From: Octopus sinensis
Taxonomy: Eukaryota
Reading direction: 5' to 3'
Assembly: GCF_006345805.1 (NCBI RefSeq)
Contig: NC_043000.1
Coordinates: 5,642,001 to 5,706,000 of the forward strand
Length of the DNA: 64,000 nt
This document shows positions 1 through 48,958 of this stretch, one piece after another. The translations under genes were made by a program, and so were the position numbers. The notes beneath the pieces are model-generated. The model did no database searches. It saw nothing but the letters and a program-made list of their open reading frames with translations, and had not been told where the DNA came from. How positions within the stretch are numbered: position 1 is the first letter of the stretch; the number at the start of each line of letters is the position of its first letter.

Positions 1-328
1 ATAGCTGAAACAAGTAAAAGACAAATGGTAAAATTTATTCATAGTATCATAGTGCAAGTGACTGAAAATTTCCCAATACTCCACGAACGTCTTCACCTCC
101 GACGCAATATTTGAACAAACTGTAATATTGAGAGTAGCAAAGGTGGATCTCTCAAATGAAGACGCAGTTCACCCTAAGAGCTTTTCTTACTGGTTGCTAT
201 GTCAGCAGCTGTTTCAAGCAACGATTTCTCGGTCATGAGATCTCTCCCACTGTTCTCATTTTATATACTCGCGGCTTGTTAGCTTTCAAAACAACATCGA
301 CTTCCTTGCAGTTTCGACAACCTTATAC

Positions 329-562
329 CTTATTTCTTTACTGCCCACAAGGGGCTAAAAACAGAATGGACAAACAAGGACAGACAAACGGATTAAGTCG
401 ATTATATCGACCCCAGTGCGTAACTGGTACTGATTTAATCGACCCCGAAAGGATGAAAGGCAAAGTCGACCTCGGCGGAATTTGAACTCAGAACGTAGCG
501 ACAGACGAAATACTGCTAAGCATTTCGCCCGGCGTGCTAACGTTTCTGCCAGCTCGTCAACT
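329..562 (-). mobile_element. SINE group B (tRNA head, Meta/MESC-like core), full copy
   Basis: Minus strand reads gagctggcagaaacg (A-box-like) ... gagttcaaattcc (B-box-like) ... ctttcatcctttcggggtcgat core ... gtgggcagtaaagaaataag tail; many copies in window. Domain name from memory. Confidence 0.85.
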
Positions 563-646
563 TTATTTCTTCCAATCAGAGCAAACTTTGGACGGCGATT
601 ATGAAGTGTACATCTTAGCCATTCAGGCGACTAGAATATATTGATT

Positions 647-819
647 ACAAATTTTGGCGCAAGGCCAGCCATTTCTGGAAGGGAGCAAATCGATTACACC
701 GGCCCCAGTGCTCAAAAGGTACTTGTAATCGACCCCGAAAGAATGAAAGGCAAAGTTGACCCCAACAGATTTTGAAGTTAAATGTAAAGATTGGCGAAAT
801 ACCCGGCGCGGTAACGATT
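647..819 (-). mobile_element. Degenerate SINE B variant (tail ggccttgtgcc..aaatttg)
   Basis: Retains gaccccgaaag.atgaaaggcaaagt core with an alternative tail also seen at 13820 and 43900. Confidence 0.65.
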
Positions 820-1623
820 CTTATTTCTTTACTGCCCACAAGGAGCTACACACAGAGGGGACAAACAAGGACAGACAAAGGGATTAAGTCGATTACATCG
901 ACCCCAGTGCGTAACTGGTACTTTATTTATCGACCCCGAAAGGATGAAAGGCAAAGTCGACCTCGGCGGAATTTGAACTCAGAACGTAACGGCAGGCGAA
1001 ATACCTATTTCTATTTCTTTATTACCCACAAGGGGCTAAACACAGGGGGGACAAACAAGGACAGAGATAGGTATTAAGTCGATTACATCGACCCCAGTGC
1101 GTAACTGGTACTTACTTTATCGACCCCGAAAGGATGAAAGGCAAAGTCGACCTCGTCGGAATTTGAACTCACAACGTAACGGCAGGCGAAATACCTATTT
1201 CTATTTCTTTATTACCCACAAGGGGCTAAACACAGAGGGGACAAACAAGGACAGAGATAGGTATTAAGTCGATTACATCGACCCCAGTGCGTAACTGGTA
1301 CTTAATTTATCGACCCCGAAAGGATGAAAGGCAAAGTCGACCTTGGCGGAATTTGAACTCAAAACATAACGGCAGGCGAAATACCTATTTCTATTTCTTT
1401 ATTACCCACAAGGGGCTAAACACAGAGGGGACAAACAAGGACAGACAAACGGATTAAGTCGATTACATCGACCCCAGTGCGTAACTGGTACTTAATTTAT
1501 CGACCCCGAAAGGATGAAAGGCAAAGTCGACCTCGTCGGAATTTGAACTCACAACGTAACGCAGGCGAAATACCGCTAAGCATTTCGCCCGGCGCGCTAA
1601 TGATTCTGCCAGTTCGCCGCCTT
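820..1623 (-). mobile_element. Tandem array of SINE B: one headed unit plus three head-less ~190 bp units
   Basis: Four consecutive near-identical units; junction gaaatacctatttctatttctttattacc at ~1000, ~1190 and ~1380. Confidence 0.9.
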
Positions 1624-1917
1624 AGCCGACCAGATTATATTTCCTGTGCACAAGATAATGCATTACATTACACAACAATACTTAACAATTTTCCCTCACA
1701 AAAATACACTGCTTTGCATTATGCTACGAACTCAACATTAAGTCAAAGCTGTCATATCTCAATATTTATTACTAAATTTTTTATAACTATTCTTAATAAC
1801 AAGAAAAACATTTTTTTTAATGTATCTTCATTCTGTCCTTGGAAATTTTTCTGCAAGAATATGTGAAATCTTAATAGAAAGTTCACTGTTTTTGTTCTTT
1901 TTTATGTATATTTAATT

Positions 1918-1952
<35 letters not shown>

Positions 1953-1984
1953 TGTATGTATATATTTTTGCATTGTTTCTGTAG

Positions 1985-2100
1985 CACGAAGTCAATTCTT
2001 CTTAGTTACATAGATTTATCTATGATATGTTTTCAATACTGGAGTGACATTTTTATTGACTTCTCGTCTGGAAATAGACCACGCTCCAATGAAACTAAGA
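1985..2100 (+). CDS. Candidate internal exon (116 nt), unverified
   Basis: Acceptor tttttgcattgtttctgtag, donor aga|gtaatt, single open frame TKSILLSYIDLSMICFQYWSDIFIDFSSGNRPRSNETK; no family recognised. Confidence 0.2.
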
Positions 2101-2190
2101 GTAATTTTTTTTTAATTCAAAATCTTTCTTAACCGTGTCGAGAATACTAGCAATTATTATTATTATTATTATTATTATCAATATATACTT

Positions 2191-2545
2191 AGGCGGCGAG
2201 CTGGCAGAATCGTTAGCACGCCAGGCGAAATGCTTTGCGGTATTTCGTCTGCCGTTACGTTCTGAGTTCAAATTCCGCCGAGGTCAACTTTGCCTTTCAT
2301 ACTTTCGGGGTCGATTAAAGAAGTACCAGTTACGCACTGGGGTCGATATAATCGACTTAATCCGTTTGTCTGTCCTTGTCTGTCCCCTCTGTGTTTAGCC
2401 CCTTGTGGGTAATAAAGAAATAGGTATTCCATCCGTCTTTACGTTCTAAGCTCAAATTCCGTGGAGGTCGACTTTGCCTTTTATCTTTTCGGAGTCGATA
2501 AAGTAAGTGGCAGCTGAACACTTGGATCGACGTTATCGACGTGTC
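2191..2545 (+). mobile_element. SINE B dimer (headed unit plus head-less variant unit)
   Basis: Starts ggcggcgagctggcagaatcg after (ATT)n; junction aagaaataggtatt at ~2420. Confidence 0.85.
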
Positions 2546-4428: not shown

Positions 4429-4835
4429 GTGGCTGTGTGGTCAGTAGCTTTCTTACCAACCACATGGTTCCGGGTTCAGTCCCACTGCGTGGCATCTTGG
4501 GCAAGTGTCTTCTGCTATAGCCTCGGGCCGACCAATGCCTTGTGAGTGAATTTGGTAGACGGAAACTGAAAGAAGCCTGTCGTATATATGTACATATACA
4601 TATATGTATGTGCGTGTATATATGTTTGTGTGTCTGTGTTTGTCCCCCTAGCATTGCTTGACAACCGATGCTGGTGTGTTTACGTCCCCGTAACATAGCG
4701 GTTCGGCAAAAGGAGACCGATAGAATAAGTACTGGGCTTACAAAGAATAAGTCCCGGAGTCAATTTGCTCGACTAAAGGCGGTGCTCCAGCATGGCCACA
4801 GTCAAATGACTGAAACAAGTAAAAGAGTAAAAGAG
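4429..4835 (+). mobile_element. SINE group A (tRNA head, CORE-like segment, internal microsatellite, tail ending gactgaaacaagtaaaagag)
   Basis: tggctgtgtgg A-box-like, ggttcagtccc B-box-like, ggca.cttgggcaagtgtc resembles the CORE-SINE motif. Confidence 0.9.
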
Positions 4836-16553: not shown

Positions 16554-17572
16554 TTACTGCGAGAACGTCCTCATTTTTGATAATCTCTTGTACACAGCTT
16601 CTGGAATGTCTCTCATCAAGCTCCAGCAGTAATCTGCCATCATGTCTGAGTTCCATTTGCCTTGGTAACATTTTCCCATTACTTCTACATCTTGATTGGA
16701 GTGTTCATGTTGTTCTTCGCTAACATCGTCCATGTTCTCTGGAAATTCACTTAAGTGACTACGTAAGTAGTGAAATTTAATGCTCATTTTTCATCCAAGT
16801 GTTTGCAAACTCAAGAACAGCTCCTCCACAATCTCTTGATAATTGGCAGCTTTCTTGTTCCCAAGGAAATTCCGCACCACATCAGAGAAGGCATTTCAAG
16901 CTCTAAGCTCCGCCGTATTCAATTTTGTAACAAAATATGAATCCGTGAGGAGTGTTCTTATTCGAGGTCTATCAAATATTCCTACCTTCTTCTTCTTGTT
17001 ACTGAGACTTGGAAAGGTAATACATATATAGTATAGATTTCTTATTCCCTAGTCATTTATATATAAATAAGGGTAAAGACCCCCTTCGGTCAAGAATGGC
17101 CATAGGATTGCACTTAGAAAGTTCCCTTCAGGGGTAACTTTCTAGGTGCAAAAGTTACCTATCCAAGGAAAAGGCCGATGCAGCTTGGCACCAGTGACGT
17201 CGAAACTCATTGCTACAGAGCTGAGTGAACTGGGACAACGTAAAATATGATTATGAATTTTCGTAAAATAAGAATATAGCCGCAGTCAAGTAAAGAAAGG
17301 TAATATATATATCTGAAGCAACCTGCTCTGTGGTCAAGTGTTTTGATGAATTGCTTCATCACACCAAGTTTCAACACAGGTTTTGCAAACTTTGTAGGGA
17401 GCCGATGTTTTCTCCTGGTCTCTAAGTGTTACTTTAAATTAAACAAGATACACCTTCTTGGCAAAGTTATTAAATGTTGTGCCTTTGAGCCTGTGGAGTG
17501 AAGTTTCCACAAACGTAACAGAAGATATTAGGATCATTACAGCACGTCCTTCTTTTTTGATGTTGTATCCAT
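16554..17572 (-). pseudogene. Chapaev3-type transposase remnant (N-terminal Cys-rich region fused to C-terminus)
   Basis: RRTCCNDPNIFCYVCGNFT...APYKVCKTCVE, then KLGVMKQFIKTL..CFRYI, then FPSLSNKKKKVGIFDRPRIR...NFLGNKK...MSIKFHYLRSHL..FPEN...VSEEQ...QGKWN..MMADYCWSL; several stops and a 264-bp insertion. Confidence 0.85.
17031..17294 (-). other. 264-bp insertion into the transposase, mostly an inverted copy of 18201-18409
   Basis: Flanked by gaaaggtaatacatatata (17012-17030) and gaaaggtaatatatatatc (17295-17313); includes the non-SINE flank of the source locus. Confidence 0.85.
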
Positions 17573-17921
17573 AACTAGAGGACAGTGGTTCAGTTCACAC
17601 CTGAAAAGAAGAGGAACTGTTTTAAGGCAAAACTCAGCTTGAATATATTATCCAAAGATTTGCATGACTATCCAACCAAATTCCCACAAATAGTGAGGTG
17701 AAGTTAACTTTTGTTATGCTCCAGGTATATACAGGTATATACCGATGGCACAAAAATGTGATGTGATAGAGCAAATCTGGGGTCAGTTTTGGAATCAGCA
17801 CCCAAAGATTAGTTTTAAACAGCTGTAAGATTTTAGGCTACAAAATAAAAGTTTTACTCTGTTGACCAGTGTTACTATTTAAAAGTTTGATTCGTCCCCA
17901 TTCAAATTAAAGTTTCATAGT

Positions 17922-17964
17922 CTCATCACAGGGACCCACCTCATCACAGGGACCCACCTCATCA
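17922..17964. repeat. 18-bp tandem duplication ctcatcacagggacccac (x2.4)
   Basis: Direct reading. Confidence 0.9.
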
Positions 17965-18042
17965 TGAGACCAACGAGACAGGCTTCTGTGACCAGCCTAC
18001 GAATCAAACTGTTTTTAACAATAATGATTATTATTATTATTA

Positions 18043-18097
<55 letters not shown>

Positions 18098-18136
18098 ATA
18101 ATAATGATATTGTGTGTGTGTGTGTGTGTGTTAATG

Positions 18137-18376
18137 AAAGCACGTGGCTCAGTGGTTAGAGCGTCGAGCTCACAATCGTGCGGTAGTGGTTCGATTCTTT
18201 ATTTTACGTTGCCCCAGTTCACTCAGTTATAGAAATGAGTTGCGACGTCACTATTGCCAAGCTGTATCAGTCTTTTCCGTGGATAGGTAACTTTTGCACC
18301 TAGAAAGTTAGCCCTGAAGGGAATTTTCTAGGTGCAATTATATGCCCATTCTTGACCGAAAGGGGTCTTTACCCTT
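18137..18376 (+). mobile_element. SINE group D, tail type gaccgaaaggggtctttaccc, with internal deletion and hairpin
   Basis: gcacgtggctcagtggttagagcg head; core ttacgttgccccagttcactcag; compare the fuller copy at 24561-24898. Confidence 0.82.
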
Positions 18377-18447
18377 ATTTATATATAAATGACTAGGGAA
18401 TAAGAAATCATGTCATGAACTTCAATAGCTTGCAGCTGTTTCCGCTG

Positions 18448-18521
18448 TAAGATGCAATGCACTCATATATGAAACTATAGGGTGATGCACAAGCACTCAA
18501 CTATGAGTGCATTGCATCTTA
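18448..18521. repeat. Perfect 20-bp inverted repeat with 34-nt spacer
   Basis: taagatgcaatgcactcata / tatgagtgcattgcatctta. Confidence 0.95.
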
Positions 18522-18533
18522 TAACAGAATCAA

Positions 18534-18905
18534 GGCGCAGGCATTGCTGTGTGATATGACGCTTACTTCCCAACCACATGGTTCCGGGTTCAGTCCCACT
18601 GCCTCGCATCATGGGCAAGTGTCTTCTTCCATAGCCTCGAGCCAACAAAAGCATTATGAGCGGATTTGGTAGACGGAAGTTGAAAGAAGCCCGTAGTATG
18701 TGTATGGGGGGTGTCTATATGTGTGTATCCTTGTATGTGTGTGTTTACTTCCCAGTAACTTAGCGGTTCAGTAAAAGAGACATATAGAATAAGTACTAAG
18801 CTTAAGAAAGTCCTGGTGTCGATTTGTTCGACTAAAAAACCCTTTGAGGCGGTGGTCCAGCATGGCCGCAGTCAAATGACTGAAACAAGTAAAAGGATAA
18901 AAGAA
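18534..18905 (+). mobile_element. SINE A
   Basis: Head, CORE-like segment and tail present. Confidence 0.85.
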
Positions 18906-21413: not shown

Positions 21414-21631
21414 GTATATTTTATGTTATTCCCAATGGTTTAGAATAATTTCAAGATTAAATATAGTTATTTGTCTTCGTAATTTTCAATGCCCAAAGAC
21501 CCAAGTCGCTACTTTCTGCTTGCCCGGCATCATGCTTCTCCCCTAGCATCTCGGGATGTGGTCACCAACACCAGTTACCCTCACTGGTCAGCTGTCATCA
21601 CCTTCGAATCTCTGGACATGAAGTTTACTTA

Positions 21632-22045
21632 CTTTTCTTTTACATTTTTCTTTTTCATTTGACTGCGGCCATGCTGGAGCACCGCCTTTAGTCGAGCAAC
21701 TCGACCCCGGGACTTATTCTTTGTAAGCCCAGTACTTATTCTATCGGTCTCTTTTGCCGAACCGCTAAGTAACGGGGACGTAAACACACCAGCATCGGTT
21801 TTCAAGCAATGCTAGGGGGACAAACACAGACACACAAACACACACACATACACATACATATATATATATATATACATATATACGACGGGCTTCTTTCAGT
21901 TTCCGTCTACCAAATCCACTCACAAAGCTTTGGTCGGCCCGAGGCTATAGTAGAAGACACTTGCCCAAGGTGTCACGCAGTGGGACTGAACCCGGAACCA
22001 TGTGGTTGGTTAGCAAGCTACTTACCACTCAGCCACTCCTGCGCC
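21632..22045 (-). mobile_element. SINE A (tail-to-tail with the 20704 copy)
   Basis: Reverse complement of the group A consensus. Confidence 0.92.
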
Positions 22046-23662: not shown

Positions 23663-24030
23663 TTAATTTAATCAAATATGTTAACATTAACTTTTGTTTG
23701 TTTATGTTTTGGTTCGTTTTTTGCTGATTTTCTTTTCTGTTTTGTTTTTGGGTCTGTTTTTTGTTTTTGTTTTTTGGTGGGTGGGGGTTGTTTTTTGGTG
23801 GGTGGATAATGTCACTGAATTATTCATTCACTGAGTGATTAAAGTTTTCTTTATCAATCAATGAACAATCTCGTACATTTTTTTCTTGGTGATTCTTTCG
23901 CTATTACTTCGGTATTTGTGGTCAAGTCTGATGAGGCCAAAATGAGATCAAGGTTTGTCCGGTGTTAGTAGCCTTGCACTCCGCCGAGACGAAGATAATA
24001 TTCACTAGTAAAGGTTCTTTTTTTCTTTTT

Positions 24031-24235
24031 TTTACTCTTTTACTTGCTTCAGTCATTTGACTGCGACCATGCTGGAGCACCGACTTTAGTCGAGCAATTC
24101 GACCCCACGACTTATTCTTTGTAAGCCCAGTACTTATTCTATTGGTCTCTTTCGCCGAACCGCTAAGTTACAGAACGCAAACACAACATCATCGGTTGTC
24201 AAGCAATGCTGGGGGGGACAAACACAGACACACAA

Positions 24236-24280
<45 letters not shown>

Positions 24281-24436
24281 CGACGGGCTTCTTTCAGTTT
24301 CCGTCTACCAAATCCACTCACAAGGCTTTGGTCGGCCCGAGGCTATAGTAGAAGACACTTGCTCAAAGTACCACGCAGTGGGACTGAACCCGAAACCATG
24401 TGGTTGGTAAGCAAGCTACTTACCACACAGCCACTC
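24031..24436 (-). mobile_element. SINE A lacking the first head bases
   Basis: Group A consensus; private flank atttttctttaacgt shared with 26627. Confidence 0.9.
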
Positions 24437-24560: not shown

Positions 24561-24898
24561 GAAGCCTCGTGGCTCAGTGGTTAGAGCGTTGGGCTTCCAA
24601 TCATGAGGTAGTGAGTTCGATTCCCGGACCGGGCTGTGTGTTGTGTTCTTGAGCAAAACACTTTATTTCACGTTGCTCCAGTTCACTCAGCTGTAGAAAT
24701 GAGTCAGAACGTCGCCGATGCCAAGCTGTGTCGGCCCATTTGCCTTTCCCTTGGATAACATCAGTGGTGTGAAGAGGAGAAGCTGGTATACATGGGGAAC
24801 TGCTGGTCTTCCATAAACAACCTTGCTTGTCTTTAGGAGGGGAACTTTCTATGTCCAATCCCATTGTCGTTCATGACCGAAAGGGGTCTTTACCCTTT
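24561..24898 (+). mobile_element. SINE D, tail gaccgaaaggggtctttaccc
   Basis: gtggctcagtggttagagcg, gagttcgattccc, gttgctccagttcactcagctg. Confidence 0.85.
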
Positions 24899-25859
24899 AG
24901 TACGTATAAATTGATTCCTGTATATTACTGGTACTTATTTTACCGATCCAGGAAAACGAACCTCCGTCCCGATAGGTTTTTAACTCGGACTACAGAATAT
25001 ATTTTGTCCGTCGCTCTAACGATTTTGCCAACCACCGTTTATTGATAAACTATAATTAGCAAGTGTTCCGTTTGCTTTCAGTTCGTATTTCTCCTACGCT
25101 TAGGCTACTCTACAAGCGCGAATAGCATGCCTCTGTCTATCACCAATACTATCACTAATACACCAAAGTCGAATGAATTAGCAGTGCTATTTGATTTATC
25201 GATTAAAAAACGCTTTAATTAAACACACTTTCTGTTATGTTATTTTAGGAACTACTCCGATAATGTATATACATATAATATTCTTTTCTTTTCGTTCTAA
25301 ACATGTTTCATAATCCATTTGTTGCAAAAGAGTTATATTATTTCAACGCTTGGCTGTCTCTCACAAATGCCTGTATCTTTCCTCTTGTGAGTTACTGAAT
25401 ATCTTAAATAAACGAATGGCAAACGCCGTAAACACAAAAAGCAAGTCCTTGGTGAGCTGAATCCACCAACAGGCTTAAAACGCTGGTTTAAGTCAATTTT
25501 ACTTCACTCATATCTTGTAATGTCCTGCTTATCAATGCGCGTAGACGTCGCTCAGTTCGATTTCCATCTCCGATTAATTTCTGATTTAATCGGTAAAAAA
25601 TCAGTCATGGTTATGTAGTTGAAAAATTATGCATGTAGTTGAGTGGGTGTGTATACATACACACGCATACACACACACATACACTCACATATATGTATGT
25701 GTGTATATATATATATATGTATGTACGTATATATATATGTGTGTATATATATAAATACACCCACACACCACTCACACACACACACATATATTGAGAGAAA
25801 CATAGATGTAGATACATACATGTACATAGTTATATATATGTGCGCGTGTGTGTGTGTGT

Positions 25860-36920: not shown

Positions 36921-38170
36921 GTGGATGGCAATTGCATGTTCTATGCACCCAGGGATTCCAGGGATCCCTGCTTTTTGGATTGCTTCGTTAACATATCCGT
37001 TATACTGTACGAATCTTATGATTCGTCTAGCAATAATTACAAACATGATTTTCCCATCAGTATTTAATAATGAAATGGGTCTGAATTGCCTCAGTGTTTT
37101 TGCATCTTTCTCTTCAGGTAAATAGATACCTTCAGCTATACACCATCGTTCCGCTACGTCTTTCTTCTTCTTCCACATTTCTCTTATCAGTGCAAGCAGC
37201 TGCACAAGTAATTTCGGGCAATACTTATACATCTTGTTGCTCACTCCGTCGTTTCCTGGTGAACTCTTTGCTCTTGCTTTTCTTATGAACTCATCCATTT
37301 CTTTTCATCTGATGTCACTCGAATCGAATGGTGCCCTTCAACCAGGTGGTTTCTTCAGCCCGTGCATTTCTGGGAGTCCTTTATTTCTGCCAAAGTCGCT
37401 CTATGTCCCTTTAAGATGGTGTTCGAGCTCTTCTTTAGTGTAATCTTCCGCTCTTACTTTCAGCAAACAAACGTTTCGCATATTGGTATGGGTTGTTTAC
37501 AAAGCTATAATAGTTCTTTTCTCTCTCCTTTCTTCTGTTCTTCCTTTCTTTTCTTAGTAGTTCTCGATGCCTCTTTTTCTATCTCTTCATATAGTTGCTT
37601 TAACCCTTTCCTTTCCTCCTCCTCCTCCTTTACATCACTCCATCTGGTTCTGAGTTTTTTCTTCTCTTCTTGTATCTTTGCGATCCGACTTTGCATTCCC
37701 TGTTCTTTCAAGTCCAAATCTTTTCTCTCCTTCCTCGTAGATTATTTTAGCCAAGTTCTCAAACTTTTGCTCGTCGTCCCCTTTGAATTTTGGCTGTTCC
37801 GATTCAACTGTGGAATGACCCTCGCTATAGTTTCTTTCCAGGAGGTTCTGGCCACACGTCTTATGGTTTTTCAACCTGCGCTGTTGAATTACTTTCCTCT
37901 GACACACCTTCCCTTGGTGAATTCGCAGCCCGATGTAACTAGCGAAAACCTTTCGCCGCTTCCTTTTTTGTTGTCCATTTTCGGTCCAAATCCATTCCTT
38001 TTCTTTTTCCCGTTCCTGTTTGATCCTCTAATCTACCCCCGTGCTCCGGGATCATGGGTACATGGTTTATCATGCTTACTTGCTGCAACTTTACCCCGGA
38101 TCGGGCTGTCGTATTGTCAATCGTCTCTCCGCTTTGTCATTCTGTTTTCTGGATTGTCAGCAAGTCTTTC
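36921..38170 (-). pseudogene. HERO-like RLE non-LTR retrotransposon, 5' half of ORF up to early RT
   Basis: KEELEHHLKGT*SD ... R*KEMDEFIRKARAKSSPGNDGV ... IYLPEEKDAK..QFRPISLLNTDGKI ... QKAGIPGIPGCIEH; stops and frameshifts; ends at (GA)n. Confidence 0.8.
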
Positions 38171-39428: not shown

Positions 39429-40185
39429 TAAGGTGGTCAGCTGGCTGAATCGTTAGCACGCCGGGCGAAATGATTGGCGTTATTTCGTCTGCCGCTACGT
39501 TCTGAGTTCAAATTCCGCTGAGGTCGACACTGCCTTTCATCCTTTCGGGGTCGATAAATTAAGTACCAGTTACGCACTGGGGTCGATATAATCGACTTAA
39601 TCTGTCCTTGTTTGTCCCCTCTGTGTTTAGCCCCTTGTGGGTAGTAAAGAAATAGGTATTTCGTCTGCCGTTACGTTCTGAGTTCAAATTCCGCTGAGGT
39701 CGACTTTGCCTTTCATCCTTTCGGGGTCGATAAATTAAGTACCAGTTACGCACTGGGGTCGATGCAATCGACTTTATCCGTTTGTCTGTCCTTGTTTGTC
39801 CTCTCTTTGTTTAGCCCCTTGTGGGTAGTATAGAAATAAGTATTTCGTCTGCCGCTACGTTCTGAATTCAAATTCCACCGAGGTTGACTTTGACTTTCAT
39901 CCTTTCGGGGTCGATAAATTAAGTATCAGTTACGTACTGAGGTCGATGTAATTGACTAAATTCCTTTGTTTATCCCCTCTGTGTGTAGCCCCTTGTGAGC
40001 AGTAAAGAAATAAGGATCGTTAGCACGCTTATCGATATTTCGCCTGTCGATGCGTTCTGAGTTCAAATTGCGCCGAGATCGACTTTGCTTTTCATCCTTT
40101 CGGATGTACTAGTGGAGTACTGGGGCCGATGTAATCGACTTAACCCCAAATTTCAGGCCTTGTGACTATAGTAGAAAGAATTATA
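39429..40185 (+). mobile_element. SINE B tandem array (about 4 units)
   Basis: Junctions aagaaataggtatttcgtc (~39650) and tagaaataagtatttcgtc (~39835). Confidence 0.88.
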
Positions 40186-40589
40186 GTTATTAACAATCCT
40201 TTTCTCCTTGTTGCGTTACTATTTATTCAGCATTTCCAAGTTACGTTGATATTTTATCTACAACAGTATGAAATATTATACTATTTTACTCTTTAATTCT
40301 TTTACCCGTTTCAACATGTGATGACCTGTGCCCACGCTGGAGCTCTTCCATTATATCAGCGATCTTAAGTAGACGCGCAAAGCAGTGACTAACAGTCAAA
40401 TTTTATAGCAAATATCTCTCAAACGGGTCTGAGAGATATTTGGATCGGTAAAAGGCATTTAACTGTATTTTTTCATGGAGAAAAAATTCTTGCTTAGGAC
40501 AAAACGGTGTAAAATACTATAGTCAGTTCAAAACGTCCTCTATTACATACATATTTCGGACTAATTTTGTTCTAGTCAGCTCCAGATGT

Positions 40590-40845
40590 AGAGGCGCGTG
40601 GCTTAGTGGTTAGGGTGTCAACATCATGATCGTAAGATTGTGATTTCGATTCCTGGACCGGGTGACGCGTTGTGTTCTTGAGCAAAACACTTCATTTCAT
40701 GTTGCTCCAGTCCCCTCAGCTGGCAAAAATGTGTAACGCTGCGATGGACTGGCGTCCCGTCCAGCTGGATGACACATATGCCATAGAAACCGGGAAACGG
40801 GGCCCATGAGCCTGGCTAGGCTTTAAAAGGGTGCATTTATTATTT
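40590..40845 (+). mobile_element. SINE D with V-domain-like segment
   Basis: gaggcgcgtggcttagtgg head; gcgatggactggcgtcccgtccag resembles the V-SINE core (from memory). Confidence 0.78.
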
Positions 40846-41184
40846 TTTTTCAGCTCCAGATACCAAAGGGAGACAACATTGAACTGACTAAAGAAGCTTA
40901 ATTTATCTCATAAGAAATCAATCAAAAATACTGACTGATGGTGCATATCGAAGGTCAGGTTGCAGTAAATTTGTTAGTAGATGCACAATTCAAGGAGTCA
41001 TTTATTACCTTGATTTATTGGTTTCTGTTCTTCCTGTTTGTCTATTTACATTAAATATTATATTGCTTTCTTTTGTCTGGACAGAAAACCTTGTATTTAC
41101 AGGAGAGCGGAAAAAGAAAAAAGTGAGATGTTGTAATACTTCTGCATTATTTTATTCTTTGCCAGTTACCTTTTATTTTGTGTG

Positions 41185-41602
41185 GTTTTTTACTCGTTTC
41201 AGTCATTGGACTGAAGCTAGACTGGGGCACTGCCTTCAAGGGTTTTATTCGAGAAATTGATCCCACTACTAATGTTTTTTCTATTTTTATCATTTTTCCA
41301 AGTCCGGTACTTAGTCAATCCGTCGCTTTTACCGAACCGCTAGGTTACAAAGACGTATGTAAATCAACACCTATTTCTTTATTGCCCACAAGGGGCTAAA
41401 CACAAAGGGGACAAACAAGGACAGACAAAGGGATTAAGTCGATTATATCGACCCCAGTGCGTAACTGGTACTTAATTTATCAACCCCGAAAGGATGAAAG
41501 GCAAAGTCGACCTGGGCGGAATTTGAACTCAGAATGTAACAGCAGACGAAATACCGCTAAGCATTTCGCCCGGCGTGCTAACGTTTCTGCCAGCTCGCCA
41601 CC
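41185..41602 (-). mobile_element. SINE A tail fragment abutting a full SINE B (41370-41602)
   Basis: Consensus matches to both groups. Confidence 0.8.
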
Positions 41603-42499
41603 TCTCGAACCAGTGAAATATCTACGACAGTCATGGTCAAACTGCGGCCTGCAACACTTTCTGAATGACACACCAACGAAACGCTAGCTTGAAATTTTTT
41701 GGAAGTGTGTACCGGCTGGATGACGAGCAATGCTTCTCGAAAAATGCTGTTCCTGCCTGATCTATGATGTCATAGCTGAAGAGAGGTAAGGGCTGCGCCG
41801 GCACTAAGGTTTGATACTTATTACAGCTAAGTAGTGTGGATTAACGTGAAATGAAGTGTCGTGCTCAAGGAATCGATGCACTACAAATTGCACCCACGAA
41901 TGTATGAATTTACGGTCGGAGGTCGAGCATGCTTACCACAAGGCCAGGCGCCTTCATGTGAAATAAGTGAAAGTTCGTAAATGTAGTGCTCCAGTATGGC
42001 CGCATGTCAATCACTGAAATCGATATGGGAGTAAATAATGCTCTAAATTGCTAAATTGAAGATTTCAGAAAAATGCAATAAAATCACTGCAGGAAATATT
42101 CTTATGATTCATTTTATTCCGAAATCAAATGTCAAAGTTCAACATGCTTTTCAATCAAATAAATAATAATATCAATTGGCGAAATAATAAAAGGGAGATA
42201 AAAATTGTCACAACATTCTAACAAAGGGAAATAAAATGGATACTTTCCGCTCGCGTTAAACCTCACAAATTGAAATTAATTGCTTAACTTATAAGTACGT
42301 AGATATTTGGCCTTTTGTTGTGATTTTTTTTTTTTTTTTGCTTTTTGCTCATCTCTTTCATATTCCTTTTGTTTTATTTTGCTTTGTTTTCTAAATCGGT
42401 TATCATACAAATATTTACAGAATATTGTTATAAATATATTCTCTTTGTTTCTATTCATTTTGGCAAAACATCAATGGTGTTCTTAACATGACACGCTAG

Positions 42500-48515: not shown

Positions 48516-48958
48516 GGCGCAGGAGTGGCTGTGTGGTAAGTAGTTGCTTACCAACCACATGGTTCCGGGTTCAGTCCTTGGGCAAGTGTCTTCTACTATA
48601 GCCTCGGGCCGACCAAAGCCCTGTGAGTAGATTCGGTAGATGGAAACTGAAAGAAGCCCGTTGTATATATATATGTGTGTGTGTGTGTGTGTTTGTGTGT
48701 CTGTGTGTGTGTGTGTTTGCCCCCCCCCCAACATCGCTTGACAACCGATACTGGTGTGTTTGCGTTCCCGTAACTTAGCAGTTCGGCAAAAGAGACCGAT
48801 AGAATAAGTACTAGGCTTACAAAGAATAAGTCCTGGGGTCGATTTGCTCGACTAAAAGGCGGTGGTCCAGCATGGCCGCAGTCAAATGACTGAAGCAAGT
48901 AAAAGCGTAAAAGAGAGTAAAGAGTATATATGTGTGTAAATATATGTATATATACATA

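What the first reader, a model, noticed from the sequence alone, without database searches (positions are those of the whole stretch)
17012..18409. Inverted local templated insertion with a 19-bp target-site duplication
17036-17246 is the reverse complement of 18201-18409. It includes the non-SINE flank (atttatatataaatgactagggaataagaaatc) and a private rearrangement, so it was copied from this neighbour and not from a family master. It sits inside the transposase between duplicated 19-mers, with ~48 nt of extra filler. Removing it restores FRYICITFPSLSN. This fits either a 3' transduction reinserted about 1 kb away or repair-templated insertion (inference). The two arms would also form a ~210-bp RNA duplex.
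Basis: partly seen in the sequence, partly recalled or inferred. Interest (0 to 1): 0.7.

Follow-up and report, generated by a model that had tools for sequence, protein, structure and literature searches.

The report
Truncated octopus SINE beside inverted relative
A head-less copy of an octopus tRNA-derived SINE sits, with a 19-bp target-site duplication, inside a decayed repeat-encoded gene about 1 kb from a full-length inverted copy of the same SINE subtype; this is most likely ordinary retrotransposition and not local copying, and such inverted pairs are common in octopus DNA.

Summary
The sequence facts hold. 17036-17247 is the reverse complement of 18200-18409 (90.6% over 212 nt). The block interrupts a conserved ORF between 18-19-bp direct repeats. 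Removing 17031-17311 restores ...CFRYICITFPSLSN... The two arms fold into a ~210-bp duplex.

The interpretation that A was copied from its neighbour B is not supported, but it is not excluded either. The window is octopus DNA. I could reach only 109 kb of octopus sequence, so the decisive test, the genome-wide copy number of the shared tail and hairpin, could not be run.

Internal evidence leans towards an ordinary LINE-mediated insertion of a 5'-truncated SINE:
- 14 of the 33 "flank" bases are shared with a diverged third copy.
- Homology ends at a terminus (...GAAATC) like that of other family members (...AATTTC, ...GATTCC).
- B's own candidate TSD starts right after the "flank" (P~0.04).
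- B has more private mutations than A.
- A/B differences are unevenly spread (P=0.009).
- 28 of the 47 "filler" bases are SINE sequence.

Against this, only two copies of the subtype were seen, 1 kb apart, and they share three internal T4 runs.

"Transposase" is unverified: the host ORF has no Pfam, PDB or fold match. Inverted pairs this similar occur about four times in the 109 kb. Interest is low.

The parts
17012..17030 (.). Target-site duplication, left copy (GAAAGGTAATACATATATA). On the minus strand it encodes Y-I-C-I-T-F of the host ORF.
   Evidence: (17/18 match, 0 of 2000 shuffles).
17031..17035 (.). Five extra bases (GTATA) between the TSD and the SINE 3' end. They create TATAG-TATAG, which reads CTATA-CTATA in the SINE sense. 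Possibly a short terminal repeat of the SINE RNA, or junction slippage.
17036..17275 (-). Copy A: a 5'-truncated SINE (no tRNA head) corresponding to B 18194-18409. It contains a 23-nt tandem duplication (17239-17261 / 17262-17284) and the internal hairpin (arms 17108-17124 and 17135-17151).
17276..17294 (+). Nineteen unassigned bases (ATAGCCGCAGTCAAGTAAA) at A's 5' junction. They match the 3' tail of the abundant SINE2 family 13/14 on the strand opposite to A. The match is only marginally significant.
   Evidence: 12 of 200 shuffles reach 13/14.
17295..17312 (.). Target-site duplication, right copy (GAAAGGTAATATATATAT). Relative to the left copy it has a 2-nt deletion, or equivalently one mismatch when read ungapped.
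16557..17404 (-). Host: a decayed C-terminal remnant (about 190 codons, two in-frame stops) of a multi-copy, widely distributed, unannotated ORF family. It is interrupted by the insertion.
   Evidence: no Pfam, PDB or fold match.
18140..18409 (+). Copy B: a full-length SINE of the same subtype. The tRNA-like head is 18140-18197, followed directly by TTTATTTT at 18198-18205. The hairpin arms are 18294-18310 and 18321-18337. The subtype-specific tail GACTAGGGAATAAGAAATC is 18391-18409.
18411..18419 (.). Candidate right-hand TSD of B (TGTCATGAA), paired with TGTTAATGAA at 18129-18138 immediately upstream of B's head. If real, it shows that B's inserted unit ends at ...GAAATC(A).
   Evidence: anchored score P=0.039; two other positions tie, so this is weak.
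24564..24918 (+). Copy C: a diverged member (about 80% identity) of the same SINE family. It lacks the A/B deletions, hairpin and tail insert. Used as an outgroup.
18546..18900 (+). Nearest copy of the hyper-abundant SINE2 family (about 25 copies in the window). Its tail resembles the 19-nt filler.

Best explanation
Copy A is an ordinary LINE-mediated (target-primed reverse transcription) insertion of a 5'-truncated RNA from a tRNA-derived octopus SINE subtype. That subtype has its own tail, and B is an older, full-length member of it.

Proposed sequence of events (the TSD and the element layout are shown; the individual steps are inferred):
1. A LINE endonuclease nicked the plus strand after ...ACATATATA (17030).
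2. That 3'-OH primed cDNA synthesis on the 3' end of the SINE RNA (...GAAAUC, perhaps followed by CUAUA repeats that paired with the TA-rich target).
3. Synthesis stopped within the T-arm of the tRNA head.
4. The 5' junction was sealed untidily, leaving a 23-nt duplication and 19 extra nt.
5. A staggered second nick 19-20 bp away produced the TSD.

On this reading the 'flank' is the element's own 3' tail, and the 1-kb inverted spacing from B is coincidence in a genome packed with SINEs. If A and B lie in one transcript, they would form a ~210-bp dsRNA of the kind already known to be the main hyper-editing substrate in octopus.
For: - TSD of 18-19 bp: 0 of 2000 shuffles reach it. It flanks an insert that splits an otherwise contiguous conserved ORF.
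- Layout: the element's 3' end abuts one TSD copy and the truncated 5' end abuts the other. This is the canonical TPRT arrangement.
- Family membership: the SINE family is dispersed, with copy C in the window and a copy on O. bimaculoides chromosome CM046608.1.
- The 'flank' is partly SINE: 14 of its 33 nt align with C.
- Terminus: A/B homology ends at ...GAAATC, and C-type copies end at ...GATTCC and ...AATTTC at the aligned position.
- TSD positions: the TSD starts immediately after that terminus in the L002 copy (P=0.013), 1 nt after it in B (P=0.039), and 5 nt after it in A (the first two combine to P=0.004).
- Polarised differences: B has 9-11 private changes and A has 2-6. This is the opposite of what an error-prone copy of B would show.
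- Distribution of differences: 12 of 68 in the 5' part against 7 of 130 in the 3' part, none in the last 48 nt, P=0.009. Only 1-2 of the 12 are at CpGs. This fits sources that differ in the body but keep a constrained tail.
- A's 5' junction sequence is absent from B's locus.
- Mollusc SINEs are modular and swap tails between families (PMC4758252).
- Close inverted pairs are common here: 31 within 2 kb in 109 kb, and three are at least as similar as A/B. In O. bimaculoides 0.44% of loci have a >95% identical inverted match within 2 kb (PMC5625713).
Against: - Only two copies of the A/B subtype were seen in 109 kb, and they are 1 kb apart. The chance that a given copy has a same-subtype neighbour within 1.4 kb is about 1% for 10,000 copies and 0.1% for 1,000.
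- A and B share three internal T4 runs, one of them directly after the tRNA head. Copy C and the SINE2 consensus have none, with a joint probability of about 0.02 of having none by chance. A Pol III-driven master carrying these runs should terminate early.
- B's TSD is weak: two other positions score equally. No TSD was found for C.
- The mutation asymmetry is not significant (P=0.07 to 0.33).
- No partner LINE tail was identified.
Confidence: 0.55

Rival explanations
1. A is a retro-copy of a transcript from B's own locus (a source-daughter pair). The last 19 nt would then be B's genomic flank carried along as a 3' transduction.
For: - A and B share every subtype-specific feature, and the tail is 100% identical.
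- No third copy of the subtype was found in 109 kb.
- The shared T4 runs look like decay of a dead genomic copy, not features of a Pol III master.
- The TSD and 5' truncation fit an RNA intermediate.
Against: - A retrotransposed RNA lands essentially at random, so the chance of landing within 1.4 kb of its source is about 1e-6. Proximity therefore gives this model no support.
- There is no Pol III terminator or poly(A) at the end of the shared sequence. The T4 at 18202 would stop Pol III before the part that A contains.
- B's candidate TSD places the 'flank' inside B's own insert.
- B has more private changes than A.
- The A/B differences are non-uniform.
Confidence: 0.12
2. A is a DNA-level, locally templated insertion. 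During break repair or replication (MMBIR/FoSTeS or SDSA-like template switching), the broken end copied about 216 nt from B, 1 kb away, in inverted orientation. It then returned 19 bp behind the departure point, which produced the flanking duplication.
For: - The donor is close (1 kb) and inverted, which is typical of template-switch events.
- Both junctions are untidy, with extra bases and a 23-nt duplication.
- Only two copies of the subtype were seen.
- This model needs no transcription through the T4 runs.
Against: - The copied segment ends exactly at what appears to be the SINE's natural 3' terminus. A polymerase copying DNA has no reason to start there.
- An 18-19-bp duplication with the element's 3' end at one side is the TPRT signature.
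- The filler shows no excess of local templates: it has 24 matches of at least 10 nt scattered over the window, so the nearby ones are expected by chance.
- The mutation asymmetry and the non-uniform differences argue against a simple copy of B.
Confidence: 0.13
3. Dual-template ('twin-priming-like') insertion. The two staggered nicks each primed on a different SINE RNA. One strand copied the A/B-type RNA from its 3' end and the other strand copied about 16-19 nt of a SINE2 tail. The two cDNAs then joined head to head. This would be an elaboration of the best explanation that accounts for the 19-nt filler.
For: - 17276-17294 matches the SINE2 tail 13/14, followed by GTAAA.
- It lies directly against the right TSD copy with its 3' end pointing outwards, on the strand opposite to A. 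This is the geometry that twin priming predicts.
- SINE2 RNA should be abundant, given about 25 copies per 64 kb.
Against: - The match is only marginal: 12 of 200 shuffled fillers reach 13/14.
- It requires a 13-nt internal deletion relative to the SINE2 tail.
- Extra, partly templated bases at 5' junctions are common and need no special mechanism.
Confidence: 0.1
4. Assembly artefact: a mis-join or collapsed repeat created the inverted copy.
For: None specific. The region is repeat-rich and read support could not be examined.
Against: - The arms differ at about 9% of positions.
- The insert is bounded by a TSD, and its removal restores a conserved reading frame. Artefacts do not do that.
Confidence: 0.02

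Closest known systems
LINE-mediated retrotransposition of tRNA-derived SINEs with a central conserved domain and a family-specific 3' tail (mollusc 'jigsaw' SINEs, PMC4758252; octopus tRNA-derived SINEs of Ohshima and Okada 1994, as cited there)
   Same: tRNA-like head with a GGTTCGATTC B-box, a conserved body, and a subtype-specific tail. The insert is 5'-truncated and flanked by a TSD. Head, body and tail differ between subtypes in a modular way.
   Different: The A/B subtype carries three shared internal T4 runs and a fold-back hairpin. Its copy number is unknown, and no partner LINE tail was identified here. My recollection that the body resembles the Nin-DC domain comes from memory and was not tested.
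3' transduction by LINE-1 and SVA (read-through of the element's own terminator into unique flanking DNA, which is then retrotransposed with it)
   Same: A daughter copy would share sequence beyond the canonical element end with one specific source locus.
   Different: Here the extra 19 nt end in a motif like the family's normal terminus and appear to lie inside B's own TSD. There is no downstream terminator or poly(A). Transduced copies are not expected to land near their source.
Twin priming, or 5' inversion, in LINE-1 insertions (Ostertag and Kazazian 2001; from my own knowledge)
   Same: Two segments in opposite orientation inside one TSD-flanked insertion, each with its priming end facing a TSD copy.
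   Different: Classical twin priming uses a single RNA. Here the short second segment resembles a different SINE, and the match is only marginal.
Templated insertions from nearby inverted donors in replication or repair template switching (MMBIR/FoSTeS, short template-switch mutations)
   Same: Inverted copy of a sequence about 1 kb away, a small flanking duplication, and extra bases at the junctions.
   Different: The segment boundary coincides with a retroelement terminus, and the duplication has the size and layout of a retrotransposition TSD.
Neighbouring inverted repeats as ADAR hyper-editing substrates (inverted Alu pairs in human; shown across Metazoa and especially in O. bimaculoides, PMC5625713)
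   Same: Two inverted SINE copies 1 kb apart at about 91% identity, predicted to form a ~210-bp duplex.
   Different: Nothing distinguishes this pair. Transcription and editing of this locus were not testable.

Membership tests
TPRT (LINE-mediated) SINE insertion | Insert flanked by a target-site duplication of host sequence | tested here: met
   17012-17029 vs 17295-17312 match 17/18, and 0 of 2000 shuffles reach this. The same 'YI' codons are present on both sides. Excision restores the ORF.
TPRT (LINE-mediated) SINE insertion | The element's 3' terminus abuts one TSD copy, and the 5' end is full-length or truncated at the other | tested here: met
   The 3' end ...GAAATC lies 5 nt from TSD1. 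The 5' end is truncated within the tRNA T-arm (equivalent to B 18194) and lies 19 nt from TSD2.
TPRT (LINE-mediated) SINE insertion | The inserted sequence belongs to a dispersed repeat family with independent flanks | tested here: inconclusive
   At family level this is met: copy C in the window and L002:12933-13296 in O. bimaculoides. At subtype level (tail plus hairpin) only A and B were seen in 109 kb. No octopus genome was searchable.
TPRT (LINE-mediated) SINE insertion | The 3' tail is shared with a partner LINE | not testable with these tools
   The only LINE fragment in the window (about 38040-36950, minus strand) is 5'-proximal. No LINE 3' ends from this genome were available.
3' transduction | The shared extra sequence is unique flanking DNA of the source locus, lying outside the source's own TSD | tested here: inconclusive
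   This leans towards not met. B's best anchored TSD starts 1 nt after the 19 nt (P=0.039), but two other positions tie. The 19 nt end in a family-like terminus.
3' transduction | Read-through of the element's terminator to a downstream terminator or poly(A) site that marks the end of the transduced segment | tested here: not met
   There is no T-run or A-run at or after 18409. Four T4 runs lie upstream inside B.
Repair- or replication-templated insertion (MMBIR/SDSA) | The donor segment has arbitrary boundaries unrelated to mobile-element termini | tested here: not met
   One boundary coincides with the apparent SINE 3' terminus.
Repair- or replication-templated insertion (MMBIR/SDSA) | A nearby donor, and filler pieces templated from local sequence | tested here: inconclusive
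   The donor is 1 kb away, so that part is met. The filler's local matches are no more than chance, with 24 matches of at least 10 nt spread over 64 kb.
DNA transposase (host ORF) | A recognisable catalytic domain (DDE/RNase H-like or other transposase fold) | tested here: not met
   No Pfam hit for the window ORF or for relatives up to 488 aa. No PDB sequence hit. The AF2 model is confident only for a helical region, and Foldseek gives nothing at E<0.001. Multi-copy status is shown.
Inverted-repeat dsRNA (ADAR substrate) | Two reverse-oriented, highly similar copies within about 2 kb that pair in a single transcript | tested here: met
   Pairing appears in both the MFE and the centroid fold. 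Co-transcription and editing are not testable here.

The most novel reading that the evidence does not exclude
A was copied from its neighbour B by a local mechanism: either template switching at a break or fork, or reverse transcription of nascent local RNA at a LINE-made nick. A decayed, Pol III-dead SINE copy would thus have been duplicated in inverted orientation 1 kb away, creating a long dsRNA-forming pair in one step. If such local copying were common, it could help explain why octopus genomes are so rich in nearby, nearly perfect inverted repeats.
Probability: 0.2. Interest if true: 0.45.

Novelty: already known. Interest (0 to 1): 0.15.

Why it matters
If this is the ordinary case, it matters little. 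It is one more SINE insertion into a dead repeat, and one more inverted SINE pair of the kind already known to drive hyper-editing in octopus (PMC5625713).

It does show that 'private' features judged from a single window are unreliable in a genome whose SINE subfamilies cannot be seen in 64 kb.

If the local-copy reading were right, the locus would be a clean example of a templated inverted duplication that generates a dsRNA-forming pair. It would then be worth asking how many of the abundant octopus inverted pairs arose that way. A genome-wide scan for inverted neighbours that share flanking sequence could answer that.

Tried and rejected
1. Searching the 5.8-billion-protein collection with conceptual translations of the A/B SINE, to find other copies as spurious ORFs: one candidate, no hit.
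2. Exact-pattern scans with the SINE 3' core, the hairpin arm and the body/tail junction against metagenome, viral and prokaryotic genome collections: all empty. These collections hold no usable octopus DNA.
3. Fetching genomic context of host-ORF and LINE-RT homologs (L001, L003, L004): none carries the octopus SINEs, so they come from other organisms.
4. Other O. bimaculoides gene models (P0092, P0083) and window ORFs, including two that span the junctions: not on record. No independent assembly or empty allele could be retrieved.
5. Rfam and tRNA scans of the region: only low-complexity noise and no tRNA call.
6. Literature search for the sequence strings: none found.
7. Local patchwork origin of the filler: the 10-mer match next to the nearby SINE2 tail (18904) is one of 24 chance matches of at least 10 nt, so this idea was rejected.
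8. My first impression that another reading frame upstream of the insert encoded an N-terminal zinc-finger-like region was wrong. tblastn shows host homology only in 17404-16557.
9. Paralogous empty site for B: B's flanks are unique in the available DNA.
10. TSDs of older SINE2 copies as a yardstick for TSD length: mostly undetectable.
11. Structure-based identification of the host ORF: low-confidence model outside a helical core, and no fold match.
Full report
WHAT IS THERE. The window is repeat-rich eukaryotic DNA with about 38% GC. Translations of its most abundant SINE (SINE2, about 25 copies) hit Octopus bimaculoides gene models at 84-93% identity. A 45-kb stretch of O. bimaculoides chromosome CM046608.1 (L002) carries the same repeat families. 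The window is therefore from an octopus.

The finding concerns two copies of a tRNA-derived SINE.
- Copy B (18140-18409, plus strand) is full-length. It has a tRNA-like head ending in GGTTCGATTC (18188-18197), a body with an internal hairpin (arms 18294-18310 and 18321-18337), and a tail ending in GACTAGGGAATAAGAAATC.
- Copy A (17036-17275, minus strand) lacks the head.
- The arms match at 90.6% over 212 nt, E=1e-80.
- A third copy, C (24564-24918), and a copy in L002 (12933-13296) are about 80% similar. Both lack A/B's two deletions, the hairpin's 5' arm and the last 19 nt of the tail.

THE INSERTION IS REAL.
- A lies in a decayed minus-strand ORF whose intact relatives (up to 66% identity) read ...CF.YIC.TFP.LS... 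without interruption.
- tblastn gives two HSPs, 17374-17306 ending ...CFRYI and 17030-16557 starting YICITF.... They overlap by exactly 'YI', so the same codons occur on both sides.
- The direct repeats 17012-17029 and 17295-17312 match 17/18, and 0 of 2000 shuffles reach this. Read with a gap, the duplication is 19-20 bp and the right copy has lost 'AC'.

ANATOMY OF THE INSERT.
- TSD1: 17012-17030.
- GTATA: 17031-17035. With the end of the TSD it forms TATAG-TATAG.
- SINE segment: 17036-17275.
- 19 unassigned nt: 17276-17294.
- TSD2: 17295-17312.

After a 23-nt tandem duplication (17239-17261 / 17262-17284, 14/16 identical), homology to B resumes and runs to B 18194 (14/15). The 19 remaining nt match the SINE2 tail 13/14 on the opposite strand, directly against TSD2. 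That geometry would suit a twin-priming-like event, but 6% of shuffled fillers do as well, so I treat it only as a lead.

IS THE SHARED TAIL FLANK OR ELEMENT? This is the crux.

The direct test is to count copies of the tail and hairpin in the genome, and I could not run it. The protein collection holds no ORFs from this SINE. The DNA collections hold no octopus sequence. Apart from L002, no octopus locus could be retrieved. In the 109 kb available, the A/B-specific 19-mer occurs only in A and B.

Internal evidence leans towards 'element':
2. In the four-way alignment the termini line up: A/B ...AAGAAATC, C ...TGATTCC, L002 ...TAATTTC. A/B carries about 13 extra nt just upstream.
3. The L002 copy has a 9-bp TSD (TAGGATAGA / TATGATAGA) that starts immediately after AATTTC (empirical P=0.013). 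B's best anchored TSD (TGTTAATGAA / TG-TCATGAA) starts 1 nt after GAAATC (P=0.039). A's TSD starts 5 nt after it. The B result is weak on its own, because two other positions tie. If it is real, the 19 nt arrived with B's RNA.
4. I polarised the A/B differences using C and L002 as outgroups. B has 9 firm and 2 probable private changes. A has 2 firm and 3 probable, plus one 2-nt insertion. A copy made from B should show parity, or an excess in A. The asymmetry is suggestive only (P=0.07 to 0.33).
5. The differences are unevenly placed: 12 in B 18212-18279, 7 in 18280-18409, and none in the last 48 nt (P=0.009). CpG decay explains at most two of them. Neutral divergence after copying should be uniform. 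Sources that differ in the body but keep a constrained LINE-recognition tail would produce this pattern.
6. A's 5' junction sequence does not come from B's locus.

EVIDENCE ON THE OTHER SIDE.
- Only two copies of the subtype were seen, and they are neighbours. For N genomic copies, the chance that B has a same-subtype neighbour within 1.4 kb is about N x 1e-6.
- A and B share three T4 runs: ATTTTAC directly after the tRNA head, CTTTTCC and CTTTTGC. Copy C and the SINE2 consensus have many T3 runs but no T4, with a joint chance of about 0.02. That hints T4 is avoided in active octopus SINEs. A master carrying these runs should be poorly transcribed by Pol III. This is the best argument that the shared features arose in a dead genomic copy.

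WEIGHING THE MODELS.
A retro-copy of B would land within 1.4 kb with probability about 1e-6, which is worse than coincidence between subfamily members for any N above 1.
- Proximity does favour a DNA-level template switch. However, that model does not explain why the copied segment ends at the element's apparent natural terminus, nor the retrotransposon-type TSD layout.
- Close inverted pairs are also not rare here. There are 31 pairs of at least 60 nt within 2 kb in the 109 kb, and three have identity at or above A/B's (96%, 93%, 91%). Two neighbouring same-strand SINE2 copies reach 90.6%.
- Porath et al. found that 0.44% of random O. bimaculoides loci have a >95% identical inverted match within 2 kb, the highest value among 19 animals (PMC5625713). 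That figure was computed without a low-complexity filter, so (TA)n tracts probably inflate it.
- My estimates: ordinary TPRT insertion of a subtype member about 0.55, local DNA templating about 0.13, retro-copy of B's locus about 0.12. The remainder goes to variants and artefact.

HOST ORF. The label 'transposase' is not verified.
- The family is widespread, with named hits only as 'uncharacterized' in a frog and a sea spider.
- It is multi-copy: clusters at 90% identity have 10-32 members on different large contigs.
- It has no Pfam match even for 488-aa members and no PDB sequence match.
- The AlphaFold model is confident only for a helical core, and that core has no fold match.
- In the window only the C-terminal ~190 codons survive (17404-16557), with two in-frame stops. 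B lies outside this remnant.

RNA DUPLEX. Folding 17030-18415 pairs the arms over about 210 bp in both the MFE and the centroid structure. Whether the two arms are co-transcribed is unknown. Neighbouring inverted repeats are already established as the main hyper-editing substrate, in octopus especially (PMC5625713), so this part is correct but ordinary.

VERDICT. The claim of local templating is an over-reading of features that cannot be judged private from 64 kb. The most likely reading is a routine SINE insertion next to an older relative. One BLAST of the tail and hairpin against an octopus assembly would settle it.

Noticed in passing
window 16557-17404 (minus strand); proteins P0001-P0055, P0098-P0134: The host ORF belongs to a well-conserved, multi-copy protein family with the motif ...SEEQGERFHQD...RYQGRW...MMADYCW.L.RD. 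It is found in frog, sea spider and many unnamed eukaryotic contigs. It has no Pfam domain, no PDB relative and no fold match. It is probably an unannotated mobile-element protein.
   Followed up: partly
window 18202-18205, 18273-18276, 18292-18295 (B); equivalent sites in A: A and B share three internal TTTT runs, one directly after the tRNA-like head. Copy C and the SINE2 consensus have many T3 runs but no T4. This suggests Pol III terminator avoidance in active octopus SINEs and a transcriptionally crippled A/B subtype.
   Followed up: partly
window 18283-18337 (B) and 17108-17162 (A): The subtype's hairpin arose because about 17-19 nt upstream were replaced by an inverted copy of the element's own downstream segment (TTGCACCTAGAAAGTTA vs TAACTTTCTAGGTGCAA). 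There is also a nested 9-bp stem, GGTAACTTT...AAAGTTACC. This looks like a fold-back template switch. Copy C has only the 3' arm.
   Followed up: partly
window, about 25 sites (e.g. 4432-4834, 18546-18900, 48518-48914): The SINE2 family is extremely dense, at about one copy per 2.5 kb. It carries an internal (TA)n(TG)n microsatellite and ends in (AGTAAAAG)-like repeats. Its translations appear inside O. bimaculoides gene models (P0083-P0097), which means exonised or mis-annotated SINEs.
   Followed up: partly
window 18437-18467 / 18502-18532: A 31-nt-arm inverted repeat (87%) forms a stand-alone hairpin between B and the next SINE2. It is unique in the 109 kb examined.
   Followed up: no
window 325-2540 and 39431-41603: Two regions hold tandem arrays of ~190-230-nt units together with an inverted unit 1-2 kb away, at 91-93% identity. 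These pairs form dsRNA at least as well as A/B.
   Followed up: no
window 21629-22038 vs 24022-24436: Two same-strand SINE2 copies 2 kb apart are 90.6% identical over 417 nt, far above the usual 70-85% between SINE2 copies. This is another case of unusually similar neighbours.
   Followed up: no
window 17922-17957; 18021-18095; 18115-18133: A perfect 18-nt tandem duplication (CTCATCACAGGGACCCAC x2) is followed by long (ATT)n and (GT)n microsatellites that abut B's 5' end and obscure B's left TSD.
   Followed up: no
window about 36950-38040 (minus strand): A 5'-proximal fragment of a LINE (start of the reverse transcriptase domain, RVT_1 relatives at up to 71% identity), cut off by a (CT)n tract. 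No LINE 3' end is available to compare with the SINE tails.
   Followed up: partly
L003 (ENA ERZ25072724 ctg134538), whole locus: This is not octopus. It is a head-to-tail array with a period of about 3.65 kb, in which each unit encodes a 694-aa reverse transcriptase plus three small ORFs.
   Followed up: no
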